Source of the DNA: Amphiscolops sp. MND2022
Taxonomy: Eukaryota
NCBI GenBank assembly: GCA_964187785.1
Contig: OZ076411.1
Coordinates: forward strand, 71,300,001 to 71,364,000
Length of the DNA: 64,000 nucleotides
Reading direction: 5' to 3'
The translations under genes were made by a program, and so were the position numbers. The notes under the pieces are model-generated. The model ran no database searches. It was given only the letters and a program-made list of their open reading frames with translations, and was not told where the DNA came from. Below are positions 54,975-64,000 of the stretch, piece by piece. Position 1 is the stretch's first letter. Every line of letters begins with the position of its first letter.

Positions 54975-57900
54975 AACCCTAACAAATTCGGAACATTCAG
55001 TTTCTGCAAATTCTAAACGCACCAGCTGATTTGTATGGTAAAAAACTTTGAATGAGATTTTCAGACGATATTGCAAAGCACTCGCCGCCTTTTCACGGAA
55101 TATTGACGTGATGTCTCCGAAACACAGAAATTGGGACCAAAAAATCAAAAAAATAAGTGCAGATTTTCCTTTTTCCAATTCGTTTTTCGTTTGTGGCCCT
55201 TTTATCCCACTGATATCAACATTGGGTCAAAGCGGCCGCAGCATATTTTGAAATATGCTGAAAAGCAGAGACACGACACATGCAAAGTTTTGGCGCAAAG
55301 TCCGGAGCCAGTGCGGCTAAGCCGCACGCCAGCGGAGGACATCGCGCAAAAACCTTTGCTCGCAAGGGGTCCACGCTAGCGGGCCCCCAGACCAGCAGTT
55401 TAATAATTGATTTGAAAGCCCTGATGCTCCTCTTTCGAACGCTGCATAAATCGTTTGTCGGACTTGAATAGTTTAGGAGATATTGCGGTTTAAAGTTCAA
55501 GCACCCGATTTTTGGATGGATCCAGAATTTTCCTGGTCAACTTAGGGTTAACAAGAAAAATACTAAGATTTTCAAATTGTGCTGAGGCTATGGTTTTTAG
55601 TTGTTTTGAGTCATCAAATGAGTTTTTGCATCATTTAGGCCAAGTTTCGAACTTTTCATTTTCGTCATAACCCTAACTTGGCCACTGTGCCGAATTCGGC
55701 GCATTTAGTTTCTGCAAATTCTGAACGCACCAGATGATTTGTATGGCAAAGAAAACTCTTGAATAAGATTTTCAGACGATATTGCATAGCATTCGGCGCC
55801 TTTTCACAGAATATTGACGTGATGTCTCCGAAATCCAGAAATTAGGACCAAAAAATCAAAAAGAGTGCAGATTTTCCTTTTCCAATTCGTTTTTCGTTTG
55901 TGGCCCTTTTATCCCACCGATATCAACATTGGGTCAAAGCGGCCCCAGCATGTTTTGAAACATGCTGAAAAGCAATCAGAGACACGACACGTGCAAAGTT
56001 TTGGCGCAAAGTCCGGAACCAGTGCGGCTACGCCGCACGCCAGCGGAGGACATCGCGCAAAAACCTTTGCTCGCAAGGGGTCCACGCTAGCGGGCCCCCG
56101 ACCAGCAGTTTAATCATTGAATTGAAAGCCCTGATGCTCCTCTTTCGAACGCTGCATAAATCGTTTGTCGGACTTGAATAGTTTAGGAGATATTGCGGTT
56201 TAAAGTTCAAGCACCCGATTTTTGGATGGATCCAGAATTTTCCTGGTCAACTTAGGGTTAACAAGAAAAATACTATGATTTTCAAATTGTGCTGAGGCTA
56301 TGGTTTTTAGTTGTTTTGAGTCATCAAATGAGTTTTTGCATCATTTAGGCCAAGTTTCGAGCTTTTCATTTTCGTCATAACCCTAACTTGGCCACTGTGC
56401 TGAATTCGGCGCATTTAGTTTCTGCAAATTCTAAACGCACCAGATGATTTGTATGGCAAAGAAAACTCTTGAATAAGATTTTCAGACGATATTGCATAGC
56501 ATTCGGCGCCTTTTCACAGAATATTGACGTGATGCCTCCGAAATCCGGAAATTAGGACCAAAAAATCAAAAAGAGTGCAGATTTTACTTTTCCAATTCGT
56601 TTTTCGTTTGTGGCCCTTTTATCCCACTGATATCAACATTATGGTCAAAGCGGCCCCAGCATGTTTTGAAACATGCTGAAAAGCAATCAGAGACACGACA
56701 CGTGCAAAGTTTTGGCGCAAAGTCCGGAGCCAGTGCGGCTAAGCCGGACGCCAGCGGAGGACATCGCGCAAAAACCTTTGCTCGCAAGGGGTCCACGCCA
56801 GCAGGCCCCCAGACCAGCAGTTTAATAATTGAATTGAAAGCCCTGATGCTCCTCTTTCGAACGCTGCATAAATCGTTTGTCGGACTTGAATAGTTTAGGA
56901 GATATTGCGGTTTAAAGTTCAAGCACCCGATTTTTGGATGGATCCAGAATTTTCCTGGTCAACTTAGGGTTAACAAGAAAAATACTAAGATTTTCAAATT
57001 GTGCTGAGGCTATGGTTTTTAGTTGTTTTGAGTCATCAAATGAGTTTTTGCATCATTTAGGCCAAGTTTCGAGCTTTTCATTTTCGTCATAACCCTAACT
57101 TGGCCACTGTGCCGAATTCGGCGCATTTAGTTTCTGCAAATTCTAAACGCACCAGATGATTTGTATGGCAAAGAAAACTCTTGAATAAGATTTTGAGACG
57201 ATATTGCATAGCATTCGGCGCCTTTTCACAGAATATTGATGTGATGTCTCCGAAATCCAGAAATTAGGACCAAAAAATCAAAAAGAGGGCAGATTTTCCT
57301 TTTCCAATTCGTTTTTCGTTTGTGGCCCTTTTATACCACTGATATCAACATTGGGTCAAAGCGGCCCCAGCATGTTTTGAAACATGCTGAAAAGCAATCA
57401 GAGACACGACACGTGCAAAGTTTTGGCGCAAAGTCCGGAGCCAGTGCGGCTAAGCCGCACGCCAGCGGAGGACATCGCGCAAAAACCTTCGCTCGCAAGG
57501 GGTCCACGCTAGCGGGCCCCCAGACCAGCAGTTTAATAATTGATTTGAAAGCCCTGATGCTCCTCTTTCGAACGCTGCATAAATCGTTTGTCGGACTTGA
57601 ATAGTTTAGGAGATATTGCGGTTTAAAGTTCAAGCACCCGATTTTTGGATGGATCCAGAATTTTCCTGGTCAACTTAGGGTTAACAAGAAAAATACTAAG
57701 ATTTTCAAATTGTGCTGAGGCTATGGTTTTTAGTTGTTTTGAGTCATCAAATGAGTTTTTGCATCATTTATGCCAAGTTTCGAGCTTTTCATTTTCGTCA
57801 TAACCCTAACTTGGCCACTGTGCCGAATTCGGCGCATTTAGTTTCTGCAAATTCTAAACGCACCAGATGACTTGTTTGGTAAAGAAAACTCTTGAATAAG

Positions 57901-58137
57901 ATTTTCAGACGATATTGCATAGCATTCGGCGTCTTTTCACGGAATATTGACGTGATGTCTCCGAAATACAGAAATTGGGACCAAAAAATCAAAAAAAAAT
58001 AAGTGCGGATTTTCCTTTTTCCAATTCGTTTTTCGTTTGTGGCCCTTTTATCCCACTGATATCGACATTGGACCAAAGTGCCCTCAGCATGTTTTGAAAC
58101 ATGCTGAAAAGCAATCAGAGACACGACACGTGCAAAT
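54975..58137. repeat. Tandem array, ~710-bp unit, ~4.4 copies
   Basis: Marker TTTCTGCAAATTCT at 55001, 55709, 56419, 57131 and 57842 (spacing 708-712); units are near-identical. Confidence 0.97.
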
Positions 58138-58154
58138 TTTTTCAGCTCAATGGA

Positions 58155-58404
58155 TGTTAGGTGTTGACGCTCAAGATGTCAAGACCAACTTTTCTAAACC
58201 AATACTTGATTAATTTGCAATCGCACAAAATGAAGACGTGATATTGTGAATGAAATTATATTTAGTTAAACTTGATCACGCTTTTTCAGTTGTTTGTAAA
58301 TTTTCGTCACTGCAAGTTCAATACTGAATGAAACTTTCATGCTGAGATTAAATTCAATTTTTCTTTTGTAAACCAATTTACAAAGTCAACGCTATCCAGC
58401 AACA
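58155..58404 (+). mobile_element. Probable 5' LTR of BEL/Pao element
   Basis: TGTTAG..CAACA, immediately followed by a primer-binding site. The partner LTR is not inside the window. Confidence 0.65.
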
Positions 58405-58408
58405 TTAT

Positions 58409-58421
58409 TGGTGCCGCGACC
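58409..58421 (+). promoter_or_regulatory. Primer-binding site (TGGTGCCGCGACC)
   Basis: TGG-initiated, BEL-type PBS 4 nt after the LTR end. Confidence 0.7.
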
Positions 58422-58466
58422 CGGGAATCGACTCAGAAAAACGATTACTGTTCGAAATCGATCAAG

Positions 58467-59258
58467 ATGTCACTTGAAACTAAAACTATAGAGCAACTGC
58501 GTAGATCAAGGTCCGCAATTTCGGGCATTATAACAAAAAATGCCATCAAAATCAATGCTATTGCAGACAAAGCACCTGTCAACGTAACAAATGAAGACCT
58601 AGCAACCCTCAGAGCATTGCTTGAAGTGATGCAAGCGAAATTGACTTTCGCCCTACAACTCAACAGTCATCCTTGATAAATCAGAAGAAAGTGACGATGC
58701 GTTTGATATTGAATTCCAAGCAGGAAATGAATTTGAAGTGAAACTTCAGACCCAAATAAAAGAAATTGAAGGTCTCATCGACAGATCAACAGCCCAACCG
58801 AATGATTCTCACTTTCCACAGCCAACAACCAGTAGAACAATGGGAGTCAAAATGCCAAAGTTTGACATACCGAAGTTTTCGGGGCGATACAAGGACTGGA
58901 TTCCCTTCTATGATCAATTCATAGCAGCTGTCGACCAAAACGACACAATACCCGATATACAGAAATTGAACTATTTGAAGGCGTCTTTAAAGGACGAAGC
59001 AGCAACACTATTGGCTCATTTGCCATTGACAGCATCCAATTACCAGGTTGGCATTAAATTACTTGAAAATCAGTATTCGAACAAACGATTGATTCTAAAG
59101 GCTCATATGGAGCAATTCATCAAGCACCAAGCCTACGCACTGAATCTGCAGAAGGTTTGAGGCGTCTACAACTAACGCTGGACGAAAATTTGATGGCTAT
59201 GGAGGCCATGAAGATTGACACTTCACTCAATTGTTTCTATTGGGTACATATTATCTCT
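58467..59258 (+). pseudogene. BEL/Pao gag (DUF1759-like), disrupted and 3'-truncated
   Basis: KMPKFDIPKFSG..WIPFYDQF..IQKLNYLKASLK.EA..NY..LLE; contains stops and frameshifts. Confidence 0.85.
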
Positions 59259-59271
59259 GGGTCATAATTAG

Positions 59272-59915
59272 TGATAGAAAACATTTTTCTCACAAGATAA
59301 TATTGGACCCTTCAATACCCAGCTGACGAAAGACTCGATCGTGGAAGTCATAGCGAACAATCTACTTGATGCAGCACCGCGTTTGGCTATCATGAACAAT
59401 TTCCTGCCGATGGGAGTTAGAGAAACAGATATGTCCCCGCCCTCTTCTACGTGACCATCAGTGAACCAACGTCCAACGCCAATAATTGCTGAGGAATGAG
59501 CGCCTTTGACATGACTAGGTGCAGTGTAGAAGCTCAGTCCTGTCATATCTAATGAACTAGCAAAGGATGTGGAGAAATCTTCAACTGGGTTATTTTTTTT
59601 GTTTCCCTTGTGGCATTATTATATTTGAATTTTCGGAAGATTGCAGCTAATTGGCGCTTATTGGTGCATTTTTGGACAACTCGCAAAAATCCTTCATCAA
59701 ATTTAAATAGACGCTGATTGCGGACAACAATTGGTTGGCAAATCCAGACATCATCAAAAATATCTAAACTACTATTATGCGCCTCCTCTTTGATCGAATT
59801 CCAATCAAAGCAATTAGTGCCATCTATTGTTGCAAGCGAATTCCAACCCAAATCTTTCATTACCTCGCTAGAACTGCACAGTTGAATCAATGAATCCAAA
59901 TCTGACATTGCTGAT
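59272..59915 (-). pseudogene. Displaced N-terminal fragment of a JmjC-like gene, antisense within the BEL element
   Basis: ttctcttccag acceptor (AG at 59917-59916), then ORFs 59908-59549 and 59546-59268, which join if one A is added to the A8 run at 59593-59600. Motif SAIIGVGRWFTDGHVEEGG..GRKLFMI; ends at CEKNVFYH. Confidence 0.65.
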
Positions 59916-59993
59916 CTGGAAGAGAATTATATCATTAATCTAGAAGAAGTACCACTTAATGAAATAGACAAAGATCCATCTCAACTGTATTAT

Positions 59994-62978
59994 TTGCCAC
60001 ATCATTGCGTTTTCAAGGAGGAATCAACGACAACCAAATTAAAAGTTGTTTTCGATGGCTCAGCGAAAACGAGCACCGGGCAGTCCTTGAATGAATCTTT
60101 GATGGTGGGTGCAAAACGTCAGCCAGACTTGTACTCGACACTTCTGCGTTTTAGACTACACAAGGTGGCTTTATCCGGTGACATTGCCAAGATGTATCGT
60201 CAAATTGCATTAGCCGATGAAGATAAAGACTTTCATCGCATTTTGTGGCGGGATAGTCCTTCCGAACCACTAAAACATCTGCGAATGACGAGGGTCACTT
60301 ATGGCATCGCGTCATCTTCCTTTCATTCGATACGATGTCTCCAGGAAGTGGGAAAGAAGTCTACCGATGAAGAAGTCCAATTGGCCATTTTCAATGATTT
60401 CTACGTCGATGATTTCATTGGAGGTGCACCAGATAAAGACACAGCATCATCTTTAGTACATCAATTGATTGCCGCATTGAAGAAGCATGGATTTGAACTA
60501 CGCAAATGGACAAGCAGTGACTCATCGATAACGCTCTCCCCACCTGAAAAATTACGCGAAACAGAAAAATCAAAAATTCTTGATGAAGACTACCATATAA
60601 AGACACTAGGTATCCGTTGGAACCCCAACCCTGATACTTTCACATTCAATGTGACTCTGGATGCTATCAAACAACATACGAAGAGAACTTTGTTATCAGA
60701 CGTATCGAAACTCTTCGATCCTAGTGGATGGCTTGGTCCTGTAATTATTCGCTTTAAAGGTCTGCTTCAAAAACTTTGGATTCTCGGAATTGATTGGGAC
60801 TCTGAATTGCCATTTGACATCAAAGAAGAGTGGCTATCAGCGCGAACCAGCTTAAAACAACTCGAAGGTTTTCACATTCCACGCTGTGTTTTGCCTGATG
60901 GCGAAATTGAAGACTTTCAACTACATCTTTTCACAGATGCAAGTGAAAAGGCTTACTCTGCGAACGTGTATAGCAGAATCAAATCTAAGGATGGTTCAGT
61001 TTCAACGAGACTTCTGGTTGCAAAGACACGTGTGGCACCTGTGAAAACAGTCAGTTTGCCTCGATTGGAGTTATGTGGAGCACAACTGGGAACCAAATTG
61101 ATGAGTATCGTCATTGAATCTCTACAGTCCTCGAAATTAACCATCAATTCTACACATGCATGGACAGATTCGACAATCGTGTTACAATGGCTGAATCAAC
61201 TACCACGCACATGGACAACATTCGTTGCAAACAGAGTGTCCGAGATTCAAGAATCAATGCCTAGAGCAAAATGGAACCACATTCCGTCGCAACAAAATCC
61301 AGCTGATCTATCTTCTCGTGGAATGGAGGTAAAGGATTTCAAATCTTCAAACCTCTGGTGGCAAGGTCCTGAGTTTCTCGGAGTTAATGAAAATCAATGG
61401 CCAAAGCAACCGATGCTTTCTGGAACTCCGCCAGAAATTCGATCGAAGGAATCTGATATGAAGCAAACAACTGGAGTTGTGGATACGGAAAATCATTCGA
61501 GCGATTTTATTCCCATAGAATGTTATTCCAGTTTCAACAAACTATTGCGAATAATGGCCACTGTTCATGTAGCTAGTCAACATATGAGAAAACACAAACG
61601 CTCAAATTTCATCACAGTAAGTGACCTTTCACGAGCAAAGAATGGAATAATCAGATGCCACCAAATAGCGTACTACACGAAAGAGCGTACATTATTGCAA
61701 AACGATTTGCCGTCGCCAAAAGACAGCAAAATTTTGAACTTGACCCCGTTTTATGACGAAGAAACAGGAACATTGCGAGTTGGAGGACGTTTATCTCAAG
61801 GACAATTCAGAGAAAGCAAAAAGTTTCCATTTTTGATTGCTAAAGATTCACGGCTGGCATTTTTGATCCTACAGCATTTCCATGAAGCGACCCTTCATGG
61901 CGGGGGCCTGCTGACTTTGAATGCAAGTCGCGAAGAGTATTGGGTCCCTGGTGGTAGAGAACTCATCAAGAAAATCATCAAACAGTGCGTCAAGTGTAGC
62001 CGTTTTGAAAACAAAGTTCCATATCAACTCATGGCTGATTTACCCGCTGAAAAAATAACAGTAGCAAAACCCTTCCAAAAAACAGGTCTAGATTTTGCAG
62101 GACCAATTTCCACAAAAACATCACCAAAAACATATATCGCTTGTTTTGTTTGTTTTGTTGTGAAAGCGGTGCACATAGAGCTGGTGGGAGACCTCACGAA
62201 AGAAGCATGTATCGCTGCTATAAAACGATTCACAGCACCTCGTGGGCTTCCTGAGAAAATATTCAGTGACAATGGAAGGAATTTCATTGGAGCAAGGAAC
62301 GATATCCTAAAGGTTCAAGAATTACTCTCACTGGATTGCAGCAACGAATCTTTGGGAAGGTTTGTAACCCACGAAGGAATTGAATGGGAAACAATCCCAC
62401 CTCGTGCTCCACATTTTGGCGGATTGTGGGAGGCATCCGTAAAAAGCCTAAAACGTCACCTGCGAAAAACAGTCGGTTTACAGATTCTTTCCTTCGAAGA
62501 ACTGAACACAGTAGTCACAGAGATTGAATCAATTCTTAACTCGAGACCACTAGCAGCAATGTCGAATGACCCCAACGATTTACAATCAATCACCCCAGCG
62601 CATTTTTTGCTAGGAAGAGCAGCGTCTGACATTCCCAACATGACGAACAACATGGACAAAAACATATCGTTGTCTCAAAGATTCAAGCTGCTGGAACGGA
62701 TTAAACGATCTTTTTGGAAATCATGGCATCGTGATTATCTTGTGACACTTCAAGTGCGTAAACGATGGCTCCACTCAGGTCCCAAGTTTTCAGAAGGTGA
62801 CTTAGTCCTGATTGCTGAAGACAATTTACCACCGCTGAAATGGCAGTTGGCGAGAATTGAAAAATTATACTGTGCAAATGACGAAATCAACAGAGTTGCG
62901 AAGTTGAAAGTTGGCACTGGATTCCTGATTCGACCTATAGTGAAACTTCGGAAGCTTCCTGTGGAAAGCATGCATTGA
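59994..62978 (+). CDS. BEL/Pao pol (RT C-terminal part, RNase H, integrase), uninterrupted 994 aa, lacking protease and RT N-terminus
   Basis: YLPHH..KVVFDGS, DIAKMYRQI, FYVDDF, LFDPSGW, LHLFTDAS, WTDSTIVL.W, H..TLHGG..CVKC, GLDFAGP, SDNGRNF, PHFGGLWE. Confidence 0.95.
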   Translation: MPHHCVFKEESTTTKLKVVFDGSAKTSTGQSLNESLMVGAKRQPDLYSTLLRFRLHKVALSGDIAKMYRQIALADEDKDFHRILWRDSPSEPLKHLRMTRVTYGIASSSFHSIRCLQEVGKKSTDEEVQLAIFNDFYVDDFIGGAPDKDTASSLVHQLIAALKKHGFELRKWTSSDSSITLSPPEKLRETEKSKILDEDYHIKTLGIRWNPNPDTFTFNVTLDAIKQHTKRTLLSDVSKLFDPSGWLGPVIIRFKGLLQKLWILGIDWDSELPFDIKEEWLSARTSLKQLEGFHIPRCVLPDGEIEDFQLHLFTDASEKAYSANVYSRIKSKDGSVSTRLLVAKTRVAPVKTVSLPRLELCGAQLGTKLMSIVIESLQSSKLTINSTHAWTDSTIVLQWLNQLPRTWTTFVANRVSEIQESMPRAKWNHIPSQQNPADLSSRGMEVKDFKSSNLWWQGPEFLGVNENQWPKQPMLSGTPPEIRSKESDMKQTTGVVDTENHSSDFIPIECYSSFNKLLRIMATVHVASQHMRKHKRSNFITVSDLSRAKNGIIRCHQIAYYTKERTLLQNDLPSPKDSKILNLTPFYDEETGTLRVGGRLSQGQFRESKKFPFLIAKDSRLAFLILQHFHEATLHGGGLLTLNASREEYWVPGGRELIKKIIKQCVKCSRFENKVPYQLMADLPAEKITVAKPFQKTGLDFAGPISTKTSPKTYIACFVCFVVKAVHIELVGDLTKEACIAAIKRFTAPRGLPEKIFSDNGRNFIGARNDILKVQELLSLDCSNESLGRFVTHEGIEWETIPPRAPHFGGLWEASVKSLKRHLRKTVGLQILSFEELNTVVTEIESILNSRPLAAMSNDPNDLQSITPAHFLLGRAASDIPNMTNNMDKNISLSQRFKLLERIKRSFWKSWHRDYLVTLQVRKRWLHSGPKFSEGDLVLIAEDNLPPLKWQLARIEKLYCANDEINRVAKLKVGTGFLIRPIVKLRKLPVESMH

Positions 62979-63380
62979 TTCCAGTCAATGAATGGAGAAC
63001 CCACTCTTATTCAGAATTGAAAACAATCATTGAAAAAAAATACCTATTATTTCTACCCCAGACAACCCCAAAAAAAATCATTGTTTTCAAAAGAAATTCT
63101 AAAAAATCGAACCGAACAATTAAAGTACTGACGATTGCCGAGCCTACGAGCATATTGGAAGCAATTTATCTGCAGCCATCAAAATTACCAAATTTTTTGA
63201 AATTCACCCCTTTCAATTGGCACTGAGATTATCAATTAATATCTGACAGTTTTATTACTGAAAAAGACACTCTTTTCTGCAAATTGCCTCTGGATCATCT
63301 CTGCGGGAAAGAACGCCTTCTTATCGTACAGCAGAGAGATAGAGAAGAAGGAAAACCGGTGATAGAGCATTACTCACTTG

Positions 63381-63496
63381 TTAAATTACAGCGACTAGTC
63401 TTTTTTCCTTTGGGTCTTTACCAGTCACAGACGCTGATTTTATATTTTTAGCATTCAGCTTTTTGTTCGGTGAAAGCAATCTGTATGCCACATATT
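63381..63496 (-). CDS. Putative terminal exon of antisense JmjC-like gene
   Basis: ttgcag|AA YVAYRLLSPNKK..KRLVAVI TAA; phase-compatible with the upstream donor via a 72-nt intron. Confidence 0.5.
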
Positions 63497-63568
63497 CTGC
63501 AATTAAGTGAATGTATTACTTCAATCGATTGAACACTTCAGACTGACCTAAACTACTCAACCACTAAC

Positions 63569-64000
63569 CTTTTCTTTGCTGCTGCCGTTCCTGAAATTGC
63601 ATGCGTACATCTTTCAAATTATTCAACTTTCTCTGTTTTTTCGAAACAGATGGCCGGCCTCTATTAGATGGACTCTTTTTGGAGAATTTCCTGTTCGACA
63701 TTGACACCAATTGTCCGATTGCCTCTGTTTTGGAATTTTTAGCAGTTGCAAGAGCTTCAGAACACTTTTGAGGATTTGATTTCTTCAAACCTACTCTCAG
63801 GACTTCATTACAAATGCCAGGGCAATATTTGGTGACTAACTGGGATTTTAAATGCCTGTCCGTAACATCGTTAGCTTCCCAACCACTAACAAGAAAGGAT
63901 CCAGTTGAAATAGTCAGGACTGAATGAGCGCACAAAGATGGTTGAATTATCATATCAAAGACATCAGTGATGTGATAGAAAACATTTTTCTCACAAGGTA
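63569..64000 (-). CDS. Exon of antisense JmjC-like gene, C-terminal half (continues beyond window)
   Basis: Open to the window edge: PCEKNVFYHITDVFDMIIQPSLCAHSVLT.. followed by a basic tail, ending AAA G|gttagt. Confidence 0.65.

What the first reader, a model, noticed from the sequence alone, without database searches (positions are those of the whole stretch)
58155..64000. BEL/Pao retrotransposon apparently carrying an antisense JmjC-like dioxygenase gene (candidate anti-silencing cargo)
No PPT or 3' LTR follows the pol stop (62978) within 1 kb; instead a minus-strand gene occupies the region. Joining 59915-59272 with 63971-63381 through their shared CEKNVFYH gives a ~390-aa protein. It contains SAIIGVGRWFTDGHVEEGGDISVSLTPIGRKLFMI, aligning with KDM2/KDM7-type JmjC [27 protein letters not shown], and DMIIQPSLCAHSVLT, aligning with the distal IPSGWIHAVYT motif. 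A complete HxE..H iron triad is thus present (H 59451-3, E 59445-7, H 63924-6), followed by a basic, NLS-like tail. JmjC enzymes include histone demethylases. A retroelement-borne one could counter heterochromatic silencing, by analogy with VANC anti-silencing proteins of VANDAL DNA transposons. I am not aware of JmjC cargo described in BEL/Pao elements. Enzyme function and membership in the element are inference.
Basis: partly seen in the sequence, partly recalled or inferred. Interest (0 to 1): 0.95.

Follow-up and report, generated by a model that had tools for sequence, protein, structure and literature searches.

The report
Retrotransposon carrying an antisense JmjC gene
A BEL/Pao-type jumping gene in this animal genome really does carry, on its opposite strand just inside its right-hand repeat, a conserved gene with the fold and catalytic residues of JmjC oxygenases (the family that includes histone demethylases); the copy in this window is a rearranged, broken one.

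Summary
The core claim is confirmed. A matching 3' LTR lies just beyond the window (64695-64936). It pairs with 58162-58404 (98.4% identical) and has a 5-bp target duplication (TTAGG), so the minus-strand gene is inside the element.

59271-59939 is a truncated internal duplicate of the gene's 5' part that replaces protease and the start of RT. The real gene is 63564-64609 and runs off the window. It has a 1-nt frame break here; sister copies keep an open 348-aa frame.

With a 144-sequence alignment, AlphaFold gives pLDDT 92.8. Every top structural match is a JmjC oxygenase (KDM2A, PHF2, KDM7A, PHF8; Z 13.6). The T..HxE..K..H residues align in register with PHF8 and are 87-94% conserved.

The gene family is abundant here: at least 122 scored matches, 78 without stops. 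dN/dS between subfamilies is 0.19-0.34. It sits antisense after pol in BEL/Pao elements and in about 14-kb env-bearing gypsy-type elements. BEL-linked copies are not one clade (AU p 3e-6).

Enzyme activity, expression and any anti-silencing role are untested. I found no published description. Earlier notes of this scan, including one follow-up, report the same gene on other DNA of this genome.

The parts
58157..58161 (.). Target-site duplication TTAGG, left copy. The right copy is at 64937-64941 in extended window coordinates, beyond the window end.
   Evidence: Direct reading of both LTR flanks.
58162..58404 (+). 5' LTR, 243 bp, with termini TGTTG...CAACA. Its partner, the 3' LTR, lies beyond the window end at extended coordinates 64695-64936 (G000:C3:71364695-71364936).
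   Evidence: Self-BLAST matches it to 64695-64939 at 98.4%. The alignment shows 3 substitutions and 1 indel.
58408..58430 (+). Primer-binding site, starting TGGTGCC..., complementary to a tRNA 3' end.
   Evidence: Read directly 3 nt after the LTR. The same sequence follows the LTR in sequencing-run contigs (loose ends at the LTR end). The matching tRNA was not identified.
58467..59259 (+). Gag remnant (DUF1759). It is broken into two frames and truncated at 59259.
   Evidence: Pfam DUF1759 at E 3e-24. Collinear with sister copies only up to 59259.
59260..59270 (.). 11-nt filler at the gag/duplicate junction.
   Evidence: This junction occurs nowhere else in the genome.
59271..59939 (-). Truncated internal duplicate of the 5' part of the antisense JmjC gene. 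It carries Thr 59460-59462, His 59451-59453, Glu 59445-59447 and Lys 59400-59402, but lacks the second His. It replaces about 1.3 kb holding the end of gag, the protease and the start of RT.
   Evidence: 98.2% identical to 63972-64640. Sister copies have 1.3 kb of gag-PR-RT here instead. The junction to pol has a 2-nt overlap and is unique to this copy.
59938..62978 (+). Pol remnant: the distal part of RT, Peptidase_A17 (the Pao RNase H region), integrase H2C2 and DUF5641.
   Evidence: Pfam. Collinear with sister copies.
63251..63256 (-). The only AATAAA on the minus strand between the JmjC stop codon and the pol stop codon; a candidate poly(A) signal for the antisense mRNA.
   Evidence: Pattern scan. 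No transcript data.
63564..64000 (-). Antisense JmjC gene, the part inside the window (C-terminal 145 codons). The whole gene is 63564-64609 in extended coordinates (G000:C3:71363564-71364609), so 609 nt of it lie beyond the window end. His2 is at 63924-63926. Beyond the window are Lys 64101-64103, Glu 64146-64148, His1 64152-64154 and Thr 64161-64163. A 1-nt frame break lies near 64250, and the start codon is at 64607-64609. The basic tail with RGRP begins at 63660-63662.
   Evidence: L012 ORFs 564-1247 and 1250-1609. An intact 348-aa version exists in a sister copy.

Best explanation
The window holds a rearranged 6.8-kb copy of a BEL/Pao LTR retrotransposon that is about 7.4 kb when whole. 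The layout is LTR, PBS, gag, PR-RT-RH-IN, the antisense gene, LTR. The family's third gene lies on the opposite strand between pol and the 3' LTR, with its start codon 85 bp inside the LTR. It encodes a 348-aa stand-alone JmjC-fold Fe(II)/2-oxoglutarate oxygenase with a basic C-terminal tail.

Shown: the gene is part of the element. It has a JmjC fold with a complete T..HxE..K..H cofactor set. It is kept under purifying selection as element lineages diverge. It is shared by BEL/Pao elements and by env-bearing gypsy-type elements.

Inferred: it is transcribed inward from an antisense promoter in or beside the 3' LTR, so it needs no splicing of the genomic RNA. The protein enters the nucleus. 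It most likely removes repressive lysine methylation from histones on or around element copies, countering heterochromatin-based silencing.

The copy in this window cannot do this itself: its gene is frameshifted and its protease and RT start are missing. The internal duplicate most likely arose through two template switches during the reverse transcription that made this copy.

My confidence by step: gene inside the element with a JmjC fold, about 0.95; an active oxygenase useful to the element, about 0.75; a histone demethylase with an anti-silencing role, about 0.35-0.4.
For: Element membership: there is an LTR pair with a 5-bp TSD and a PBS. The same pol / antisense gene / LTR order occurs in the other full copies.

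Canonical BEL/Pao domains are present: DUF1759 and zf-CCHC in gag, and Asp protease, RVT_1, Peptidase_A17, Integrase_H2C2 and DUF5641 in pol.

Fold: AF2 gives pLDDT 92.8 and pTM 0.84. The Foldseek PDB top 50 are all JmjC, with ceKDM7A at E 2.8e-8. The top 30 AFDB Swiss-Prot matches are all JmjC-domain proteins, led by JHD1/KDM2/KDM7 demethylases, with TYW5 and PSR-1/JMJD6 among them. VIA-align gives Z 13.6 over about 215 residues. In an exhaustive search of 48,161 chains the top 21 are all JmjC-type, at Z 12.6-9.7, while other 2OG oxygenases and cupins score 9.6 or less.

Sequence: in a PDB profile search the only hits are PHF8, aligned in register on T, H, D/E, K and H. A few family members touch Pfam JmjC or JmjC_2 weakly. 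Protein language-model neighbours are JmjC clusters at 0.95. The cofactor residues are 87-94% conserved across 144 family sequences.

Selection: dN/dS is 0.19-0.34 between subfamilies with unsaturated dS, against 0.5-1.4 between near-identical copies. 78 of 122 genomic matches have no stop.

Timing of the rearrangement: the duplicate pair differs by 1.8% and the LTR pair by 1.2-1.6%, so the rearrangement is about as old as the insertion. Both junctions are unique to this copy.
Against: No transcript evidence: no RNA run was listed, and the four runs found look like DNA.

No enzymatic or localisation data.

The JmjC fold also houses protein and RNA hydroxylases. FIH (Z 12.3-12.6), KDM6 (11.8-12.5), JMJD5 and TYW5 score almost as well as KDM2/KDM7, so the substrate class is not resolved.

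The protein has no recognisable reader domain such as PHD, CXXC or chromo.

It does not reach Pfam's JmjC threshold.

The RGRP motif is confined to the close subgroup.

Model coordinates could not be inspected, so the triad geometry was not measured.
Confidence: 0.45

Rival explanations
1. The protein is an active JmjC oxygenase, but a hydroxylase of a non-histone target: a host restriction or silencing factor, the element's own Gag or integrase, or an RNA such as the tRNA primer. It would work like FIH, JMJD6, JMJD7 or TYW5 rather than like a lysine demethylase.
For: FIH, JMJD5, JMJD7, JMJD6, TYW5 and the YcfD ribosomal oxygenases score Z 11.3-12.6, close to the best KDM matches. There is no histone-reader domain. 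TYW5 ranks 4th in the AFDB Swiss-Prot search.
Against: The best matches in all four structural searches, and the only PDB sequence hits, are KDM2/KDM7-type demethylases. The basic, partly AT-hook-like tail suits a chromatin protein.
Confidence: 0.3
2. What matters is the antisense transcript, for example to regulate the element through dsRNA or to drive small-RNA production. The encoded protein would be incidental or inactive.
For: Convergent transcription over an LTR element would give dsRNA. Antisense non-coding transcripts are known for other retroelements (review PMC7264820).
Against: dN/dS is 0.19-0.34 between subfamilies. The cofactor residues are the best-conserved positions. Open frames of 330-460 aa persist in dozens of diverged lineages. 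A well-folded domain is predicted.
Confidence: 0.05
3. The minus-strand gene is a neighbouring host gene, or a recent one-off transduced gene fragment, and not a stable component of the element.
For: None remains.
Against: The gene lies inside an LTR pair with a TSD. It is in the same position in all sister copies, in diverged BEL/Pao families with pol 69% identical, and inside the LTR pairs of five gypsy-type elements.
Confidence: 0.01

Closest known systems
KDM2/KDM7 JmjC histone lysine demethylases (KDM2A/JHDM1A, PHF2, PHF8, KDM7A/KIAA1718, C. elegans KDM7A)
   Same: They are the best structural matches (Z 13.3-13.6, about 215 aligned residues, rmsd about 3.9 A). The T-x-x-H-x-D/E ... G-x-K ... 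H cofactor residues align in register with PHF8.
   Different: Sequence identity is only 12-17%. The protein falls below Pfam's JmjC threshold. It has no PHD, CXXC, F-box or JHD accessory domains and is only 348 aa. It is encoded by mobile elements in hundreds of copies rather than by a host gene. Its substrate is unknown.
Antisense additional ORFs between pol and the 3' LTR of plant LTR retrotransposons (maize Grande gene23, rice RIRE2, Silene Retand; review PMC7264820, and PMC11963269)
   Same: Same position and orientation, between pol and the 3' LTR and antisense. They are present in most copies of a family. Some of the plant products are nuclear, and Grande gene23 has its own promoter.
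   Different: According to the review, the plant aORFs have no recognisable similarity to any protein family and no known function. They occur in plant Ty3/gypsy elements. Here the host is an animal, the elements are BEL/Pao and env-bearing gypsy-type, and the product has an identifiable enzyme fold.
AlkB-type m6A RNA demethylase ORF of giant Phalaenopsis Ty3/gypsy elements (PMC9289625)
   Same: An LTR retrotransposon lineage that has fixed an Fe(II)/2OG dioxygenase 'eraser' as an extra ORF, interpreted as a counter to host surveillance.
   Different: It is a different branch of the 2OG oxygenases (AlkB, not JmjC) with an RNA substrate shown in vitro. It occurs in a plant host and in a single element lineage. 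The JmjC gene here is in two LTR superfamilies.
VANC anti-silencing proteins of Arabidopsis VANDAL (Mutator-like) DNA transposons (from my own knowledge, not checked in a paper here)
   Different: There is no homology. VANC is a sequence-specific DNA-binding protein that causes loss of DNA methylation, not an oxygenase. It belongs to a DNA transposon in a plant. The analogy is untested here.
HTLV-1 HBZ, an antisense gene transcribed from the 3' LTR of a retrovirus (mentioned in PMC7264820)
   Same: A protein-coding gene on the minus strand of an LTR retroelement, expressed from an antisense promoter in the 3' LTR.
   Different: HBZ is a bZIP regulator and partly spliced. There is no enzymatic domain and no homology.

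Membership tests
BEL/Pao LTR retrotransposon | Two LTRs in direct orientation with short inverted termini, flanked by a target-site duplication. | tested here: met
   58162-58404 and 64695-64936 are 98.4% identical, with termini TGTTG...CAACA and TTAGG on both outer flanks.
BEL/Pao LTR retrotransposon | A tRNA primer-binding site next to the 5' LTR. | tested here: met
   TGG-initiated 23-nt stretch at 58408-58430 with the complement of a tRNA acceptor/T-arm end. The tRNA itself was not identified, and there is no tRNA gene in the window.
BEL/Pao LTR retrotransposon | Gag with DUF1759. Pol in the order PR-RT-RH-IN with the Pao-specific Peptidase_A17 and DUF5641 domains. | tested here: met
   The sister copy L014 has DUF1759 (1.7e-33) and zf-CCHC, and Asp protease, RVT_1, Peptidase_A17 (3.7e-49), Integrase_H2C2 and DUF5641 (3.3e-27). 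The window copy keeps all of these except the protease and the start of RT.
JmjC-domain Fe(II)/2-oxoglutarate oxygenases | A double-stranded beta-helix (cupin) core of the JmjC type. | tested here: met
   AF2 pLDDT 92.8. The top matches in four structural searches are all JmjC. In the exhaustive search JmjC chains score Z 12.6-9.7, and other 2OG oxygenases and cupins 9.6 or less. The model is of a natural relative (P0005), 59-64% identical to the window family's protein.
JmjC-domain Fe(II)/2-oxoglutarate oxygenases | An HxD/E...H iron-binding triad. | tested here: met
   His 64152-64154, Glu 64146-64148 and His 63924-63926. They align in register with the PHF8 triad in HMMER and hhalign alignments and are 88-91% conserved in 144 sequences. 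Their spatial proximity in the model was not measured.
JmjC-domain Fe(II)/2-oxoglutarate oxygenases | 2-oxoglutarate-binding Thr/Tyr/Phe before the HxD/E motif, and Lys on the following strand. | tested here: met
   The Thr of FTDGH and the Lys of IGRKLF align with the T and K of the PHF8 segments YTDFH and KGEKIF. They are conserved at 87% and 94%. Their role in PHF8 is from my own knowledge.
JmjC-domain Fe(II)/2-oxoglutarate oxygenases | A match to Pfam JmjC, JmjC_2 or Cupin_8 above the gathering threshold. | tested here: not met
   No Pfam hit for the window ORFs or for the intact 348-aa ORF. Only 2 of 53 family members touch JmjC (best E 0.017) and 2 touch JmjC_2 (0.021). The family is too diverged for the curated models.
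JmjC-domain Fe(II)/2-oxoglutarate oxygenases | Fe(II)- and 2OG-dependent oxidation of a substrate. | not testable with these tools
   Needs a biochemical assay.
KDM2/KDM7 histone lysine demethylase subfamily | Specific relationship to KDM2/KDM7 rather than to other JmjC branches. | tested here: inconclusive
   KDM2/KDM7 enzymes rank first everywhere, but the margin over FIH, KDM6 and JMJD5 is about 1 Z unit. No phylogeny with bona fide JmjC families was possible at this level of divergence.
KDM2/KDM7 histone lysine demethylase subfamily | Chromatin-reader or targeting domains (PHD, CXXC, F-box/LRR) beside the JmjC domain. | tested here: not met
   Pfam finds none. There is only a basic tail, with RGRP in the close subgroup.
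Transposon-encoded anti-silencing factors (VANC-like, functional class) | Expression of the factor relieves epigenetic silencing of its own element family. | not testable with these tools
   No expression or chromatin data were reachable.

The most novel reading that the evidence does not exclude
The antisense gene encodes a true histone lysine demethylase, for example acting on H3K9me or H3K27me. Animal LTR retroelements would use it to erase the heterochromatin that small-RNA pathways lay on them. It would be a portable counter-silencing module that has moved between an env-bearing gypsy-type (errantivirus-like) lineage and BEL/Pao elements at least twice. That would make it the first chromatin 'eraser' known to be encoded by animal transposons.
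Probability: 0.33. Interest if true: 0.92.

Novelty: new variant of a known kind. Interest (0 to 1): 0.8.

Why it matters
Transposons are usually seen as passive targets of chromatin silencing in animals. Known counter-measures are few and mostly from plants, such as VANC and the orchid gypsy AlkB.

Here a recognisable chromatin-enzyme fold is carried by two superfamilies of LTR retroelements. It is under purifying selection and abundant (at least 122 scored matches to its profile, from 750 first-look candidates).

If it is a demethylase, it makes the question 'can animal retroelements actively erase their own silencing marks?' directly testable with an ordinary enzyme assay. It would also explain why the gene is kept on the antisense strand with its own promoter.

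The family has no Pfam annotation on record, and the ten clusters looked up carry no name or public accession, so it also fills a small gap in JmjC diversity.

Tried and rejected
- Pfam on the window ORF pieces and on the full ORFs gave no hit.
- A PDB profile search with only the 10 close sequences gave nothing.
- AlphaFold with that shallow alignment failed (pLDDT 37). It became confident only after the exhaustive representative search supplied 137 clusters.
- I considered an intron or a programmed frameshift at the break between the 119-aa and 227-aa ORFs. I rejected this because sister copies and relatives read straight through with one extra A.
- I asked whether the rearranged form is a propagating non-autonomous variant. 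It is not: both junctions are unique to this copy.
- RNA evidence: four runs were found, but they have contigs up to 164 kb and flat depth, so they are DNA. None was listed under the library word RNA-Seq. The short Logan contigs holding relatives show no poly(A) tail.
I used the 1.5-kb flanks from the genome search and five external contigs instead.
- TRF missed the 710-bp array because its period limit is 500.
- The cluster look-up gave no names, accessions or taxa.
- The host species was not identified, because names are coded.
- hhalign of the family profile against one canonical JmjC ORF of this genome gave the right register but only 5% probability.
All protein work used natural open frames.
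Full report
**1. What is at the coordinates**

The window is G000:C3:71300001-71364000 of a 1.07-Gb eukaryotic assembly.

- From 58467 there is a plus-strand gag remnant with DUF1759.
- From 59994 to 62978 there is a 994-aa pol frame with RVT_1, Peptidase_A17 (Pao), Integrase_H2C2 and DUF5641.
- Minus-strand ORFs lie at 59268-59546, 59549-59908 and 63564-63953. None of them has a Pfam hit.

**2. The element's true limits**

I fetched the DNA beyond the window and ran a self-comparison. Coordinates above 64000 are window coordinates extended into that DNA.

- 58162-58407 matches 64695-64939 at 98.4%.
- Read at base level, the LTRs are 58162-58404 and 64695-64936, with termini TGTTG...CAACA.
- Both outer flanks carry TTAGG, at 58157-58161 and 64937-64941.
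- A TGG-initiated primer-binding site follows the 5' LTR at 58408-58430.

The minus-strand gene therefore lies inside an integrated LTR element.

**3. The 'join' is two copies**

The same self-comparison, show that 59271-59939 is a direct duplicate of 63972-64640 (669 nt, 12 differences).

- The full gene is 63564-64609 on the minus strand, and the window ends inside it.
- The segment between gag and pol is a truncated second copy of the gene's 5' part.
- CEKNVFYH is shared only because the duplicate's end point falls 29 nt before the window's last base.

Comparison with six other genomic copies gives the canonical layout, about 7.4 kb:

- LTR.
- Gag of 459 aa, with DUF1759 and zf-CCHC.
- Pol of 1262 aa, with Asp protease, RVT_1, Peptidase_A17, integrase and DUF5641.
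- A spacer of about 590 bp.
- The antisense gene.
- 85 bp, then the LTR.

In the window copy, about 1.3 kb (end of gag, protease, start of RT) is replaced by the duplicate. There is an 11-nt filler on one side and a 2-nt overlap on the other. Both junctions occur nowhere else in the genome, so this is a one-off defective copy.

The duplicate pair (1.8% different) and the LTR pair (1.2-1.6%) are about equally diverged. This fits an origin by two template switches during the reverse transcription that produced this insertion. That origin is an inference.

The family is small, with about eight copies at 95% identity or more.

**4. The gene's frame**

- In the window the gene is split into 119-aa and 227-aa ORFs in different frames.
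- Sister copies and relatives read through as one frame: 348 aa in L027, L014 and L015.
- The window's two copies both lack one A (ATAAAC reads ATAAC).
- The window's gene is therefore broken.
All further work used natural open frames.

**5. Is it a JmjC protein?**

Homologue searches:
- A word-indexed search found only close relatives, at 64% identity or more. None has Pfam domains on record, and none of the relatives from other sources carries a source name.
- An exhaustive HMMER search with their profile found 137 clusters at E<=1e-3, many of them fragments.
- None of the ten clusters looked up has a name or a public accession.

Structure prediction:
- With 10 sequences AlphaFold failed (pLDDT 37).
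- With 144 sequences it gave pLDDT 92.8 and pTM 0.84 for a natural 309-aa relative (P0005, 59-64% identical to the window family).

Structural searches:
- In Foldseek against the PDB, the 50 best hits are all JmjC enzymes: ceKDM7A (E 2.8e-8), PHF2, PHF8, KIAA1718, KDM2A, FIH, NO66 and TYW5.
- AFDB Swiss-Prot gives JHD1, KDM2, KDM7, TYW5 and JMJD6.
- VIA-align gives Z 13.6 with KDM2A, PHF2, KDM7A and PHF8 over about 215 residues at about 3.9 A.
- In a Foldseek-independent scan of 48,161 chains, the first 21 are all JmjC-type (Z 12.6-9.7). Generic 2OG oxygenases and cupins follow at 9.6 or less.

Sequence evidence:
- A 53-sequence profile finds only PHF8 in the whole PDB (E 0.9, not significant alone).
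- hhalign against a canonical JmjC ORF of this genome gives the same register (E 0.008, probability 5%).
- Protein language-model neighbours are JmjC clusters at 0.95.
- Across the 144 sequences, Thr, His, Glu, Lys and the second His are present in 87, 89, 91, 94 and 88% of the filled rows.

I conclude that this is a diverged JmjC-fold oxygenase with a complete cofactor-binding set. The branch of the JmjC family, and hence the substrate, is not resolved: KDM2/KDM7 lead FIH, KDM6 and JMJD5 by only about one Z unit.

**6. The gene is a retroelement component under selection**

Abundance and neighbours:
- The family profile finds 122 scored matches in this genome, out of 750 first-look candidates. 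78 of them have no stop, and open frames run up to about 460 aa.
- I examined the 30 best loci with their 1.5-kb flanks.
- In five loci the gene lies convergent with the end of a BEL/Pao pol. These include two lineages whose pol is only 69% identical to the window's.
- In about twenty loci it lies head-to-head with a homologue of a 581-870-aa ORF.
- Three of those loci also show the end of a gypsy-type integrase on the other side.

Five long contigs from public assemblies that carry relatives show the whole arrangement:
- LTR pairs, 95.7-100% identical, bracket gag, pol (RVT_1, RT_RNaseH, Integrase_H2C2, rve), the JmjC gene on the opposite strand, and then the large ORF. The whole element is about 14 kb.
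- By language-model features the large ORF resembles F-type viral fusion glycoproteins (Baculo_F and Fusion_gly at 0.96, with weak recognition). These are therefore probably env-bearing, errantivirus-like elements of the kind surveyed in PMC13524379. That paper does not mention an antisense gene.

Phylogeny and selection:
- A tree of 31 natural open frames places the BEL-linked genes in two separate places among the gypsy-linked ones.
- Forcing the BEL-linked genes into one clade costs 122 log-likelihood units (AU p 3e-6). Two caveats apply: the group was named after the tree was seen, and one branch is long.
- The module has therefore moved between LTR superfamilies at least twice.
- dN/dS between subfamilies with unsaturated dS (0.11-0.39) is 0.19-0.34. 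Near-identical copies give 0.5-1.4, as expected for decay after insertion.

**7. How it probably works**

Shown:
- Position and orientation of the gene.
- Fold and cofactor residues.
- Purifying selection.
- Sharing between element types.

Inferred:
- The start codon is 85 bp from the 3' LTR, and the polypurine tract must occupy the last bases before the LTR. The promoter must therefore lie in the LTR, reading inward, or in that short spacer.
- The only AATAAA on the minus strand before the pol stop codon is at 63256.
- Antisense placement lets the element express a third protein without splicing its genomic RNA.
- The C-terminal tail is strongly basic. The close subgroup has RGRP followed by KKQRK, which suggests a nuclear, DNA-associated protein.
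- The most economical function is removal of repressive histone methylation at element copies.

A hydroxylase acting on another target is the serious rival.

**8. Comparison with what is known**

Full-text searches found no paper describing a JmjC gene in an LTR retroelement. The closest published parallels are:
- The antisense ORFs between pol and the 3' LTR of plant elements, which have no recognisable family or function (PMC7264820; PMC11963269).
- The AlkB m6A demethylase ORF of orchid gypsy elements (PMC9289625).
- The varied ORF3s of rotifer LTR elements (PMC5408684).

VANC (from my own knowledge) is a functional analogy only.

Within this scan, first-stage notes on other windows of this genome report the same gene beside BEL/Pao and env-bearing gypsy elements. 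One follow-up report (s1-151499) reaches the same conclusion for the gypsy-type elements. A note on this window (s1-191946) describes the internal duplicate. I reached each of these points from my own calls.

**9. Verdict**

- The function remains a hypothesis.
- This particular copy is dead. The family and the wider gene family are what is interesting.

Noticed in passing
L066-L071 (e.g. G000:C9:51028585-51031893); ORF at L066 1435-2055, minus strand: A second, unrelated repeat-borne JmjC. Pfam JmjC hits at least 40 multi-copy loci above its cut-off: about 20 at 39.8 bits (nearly all with a 207-aa frame) and 11 at 29.4 bits. Six fetched copies are 99.6-99.8% identical over 3.3 kb. The ORF is a canonical KDM2/7-type JmjC. 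The HMM of the antisense-gene family does not match it, and no BEL, gypsy or env protein lies within 1.5 kb. The element type is unknown.
   Followed up: partly
L021, L022, L055, L056, L057; also L025-L051 flanks: The gypsy-type elements that carry the JmjC gene also carry a 581-870-aa sense ORF after it. It has no Pfam hit, and its nearest language-model neighbours are Baculo_F and paramyxovirus F fusion glycoproteins (0.96, weak recognition). It is probably an F-type env.
   Followed up: partly
window 54985-58141: A tandem array of a unit of about 710 bp, about 4.4 copies at 90-96% identity. It ends 20 bp before the 5' LTR and does not resume after the 3' LTR. TRF misses it because the period exceeds 500.
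   Followed up: no
G000:C1:25325657-25332099: A piece of the same BEL/Pao family spanning the gag/pol region is repeated four times at a spacing of about 1.68 kb, just upstream of a further copy of the element.
   Followed up: no
e.g. G000:C11:37101383/37114083/37126825, C9:17573475/17587567, C4:16357311/16371567: At least nine pairs (one a triple) of JmjC-like 336-aa open frames lie in the same orientation 7.6-15 kb apart. This would fit the earlier first-stage note that some env-bearing gypsy elements carry the gene inside both LTRs. I could not fetch these loci.
   Followed up: no
L016 (G000:C2:100773000-100782000): Two copies of the BEL/Pao element lie in tandem and share one LTR: pol, JmjC gene, LTR, then gag.
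   Followed up: no
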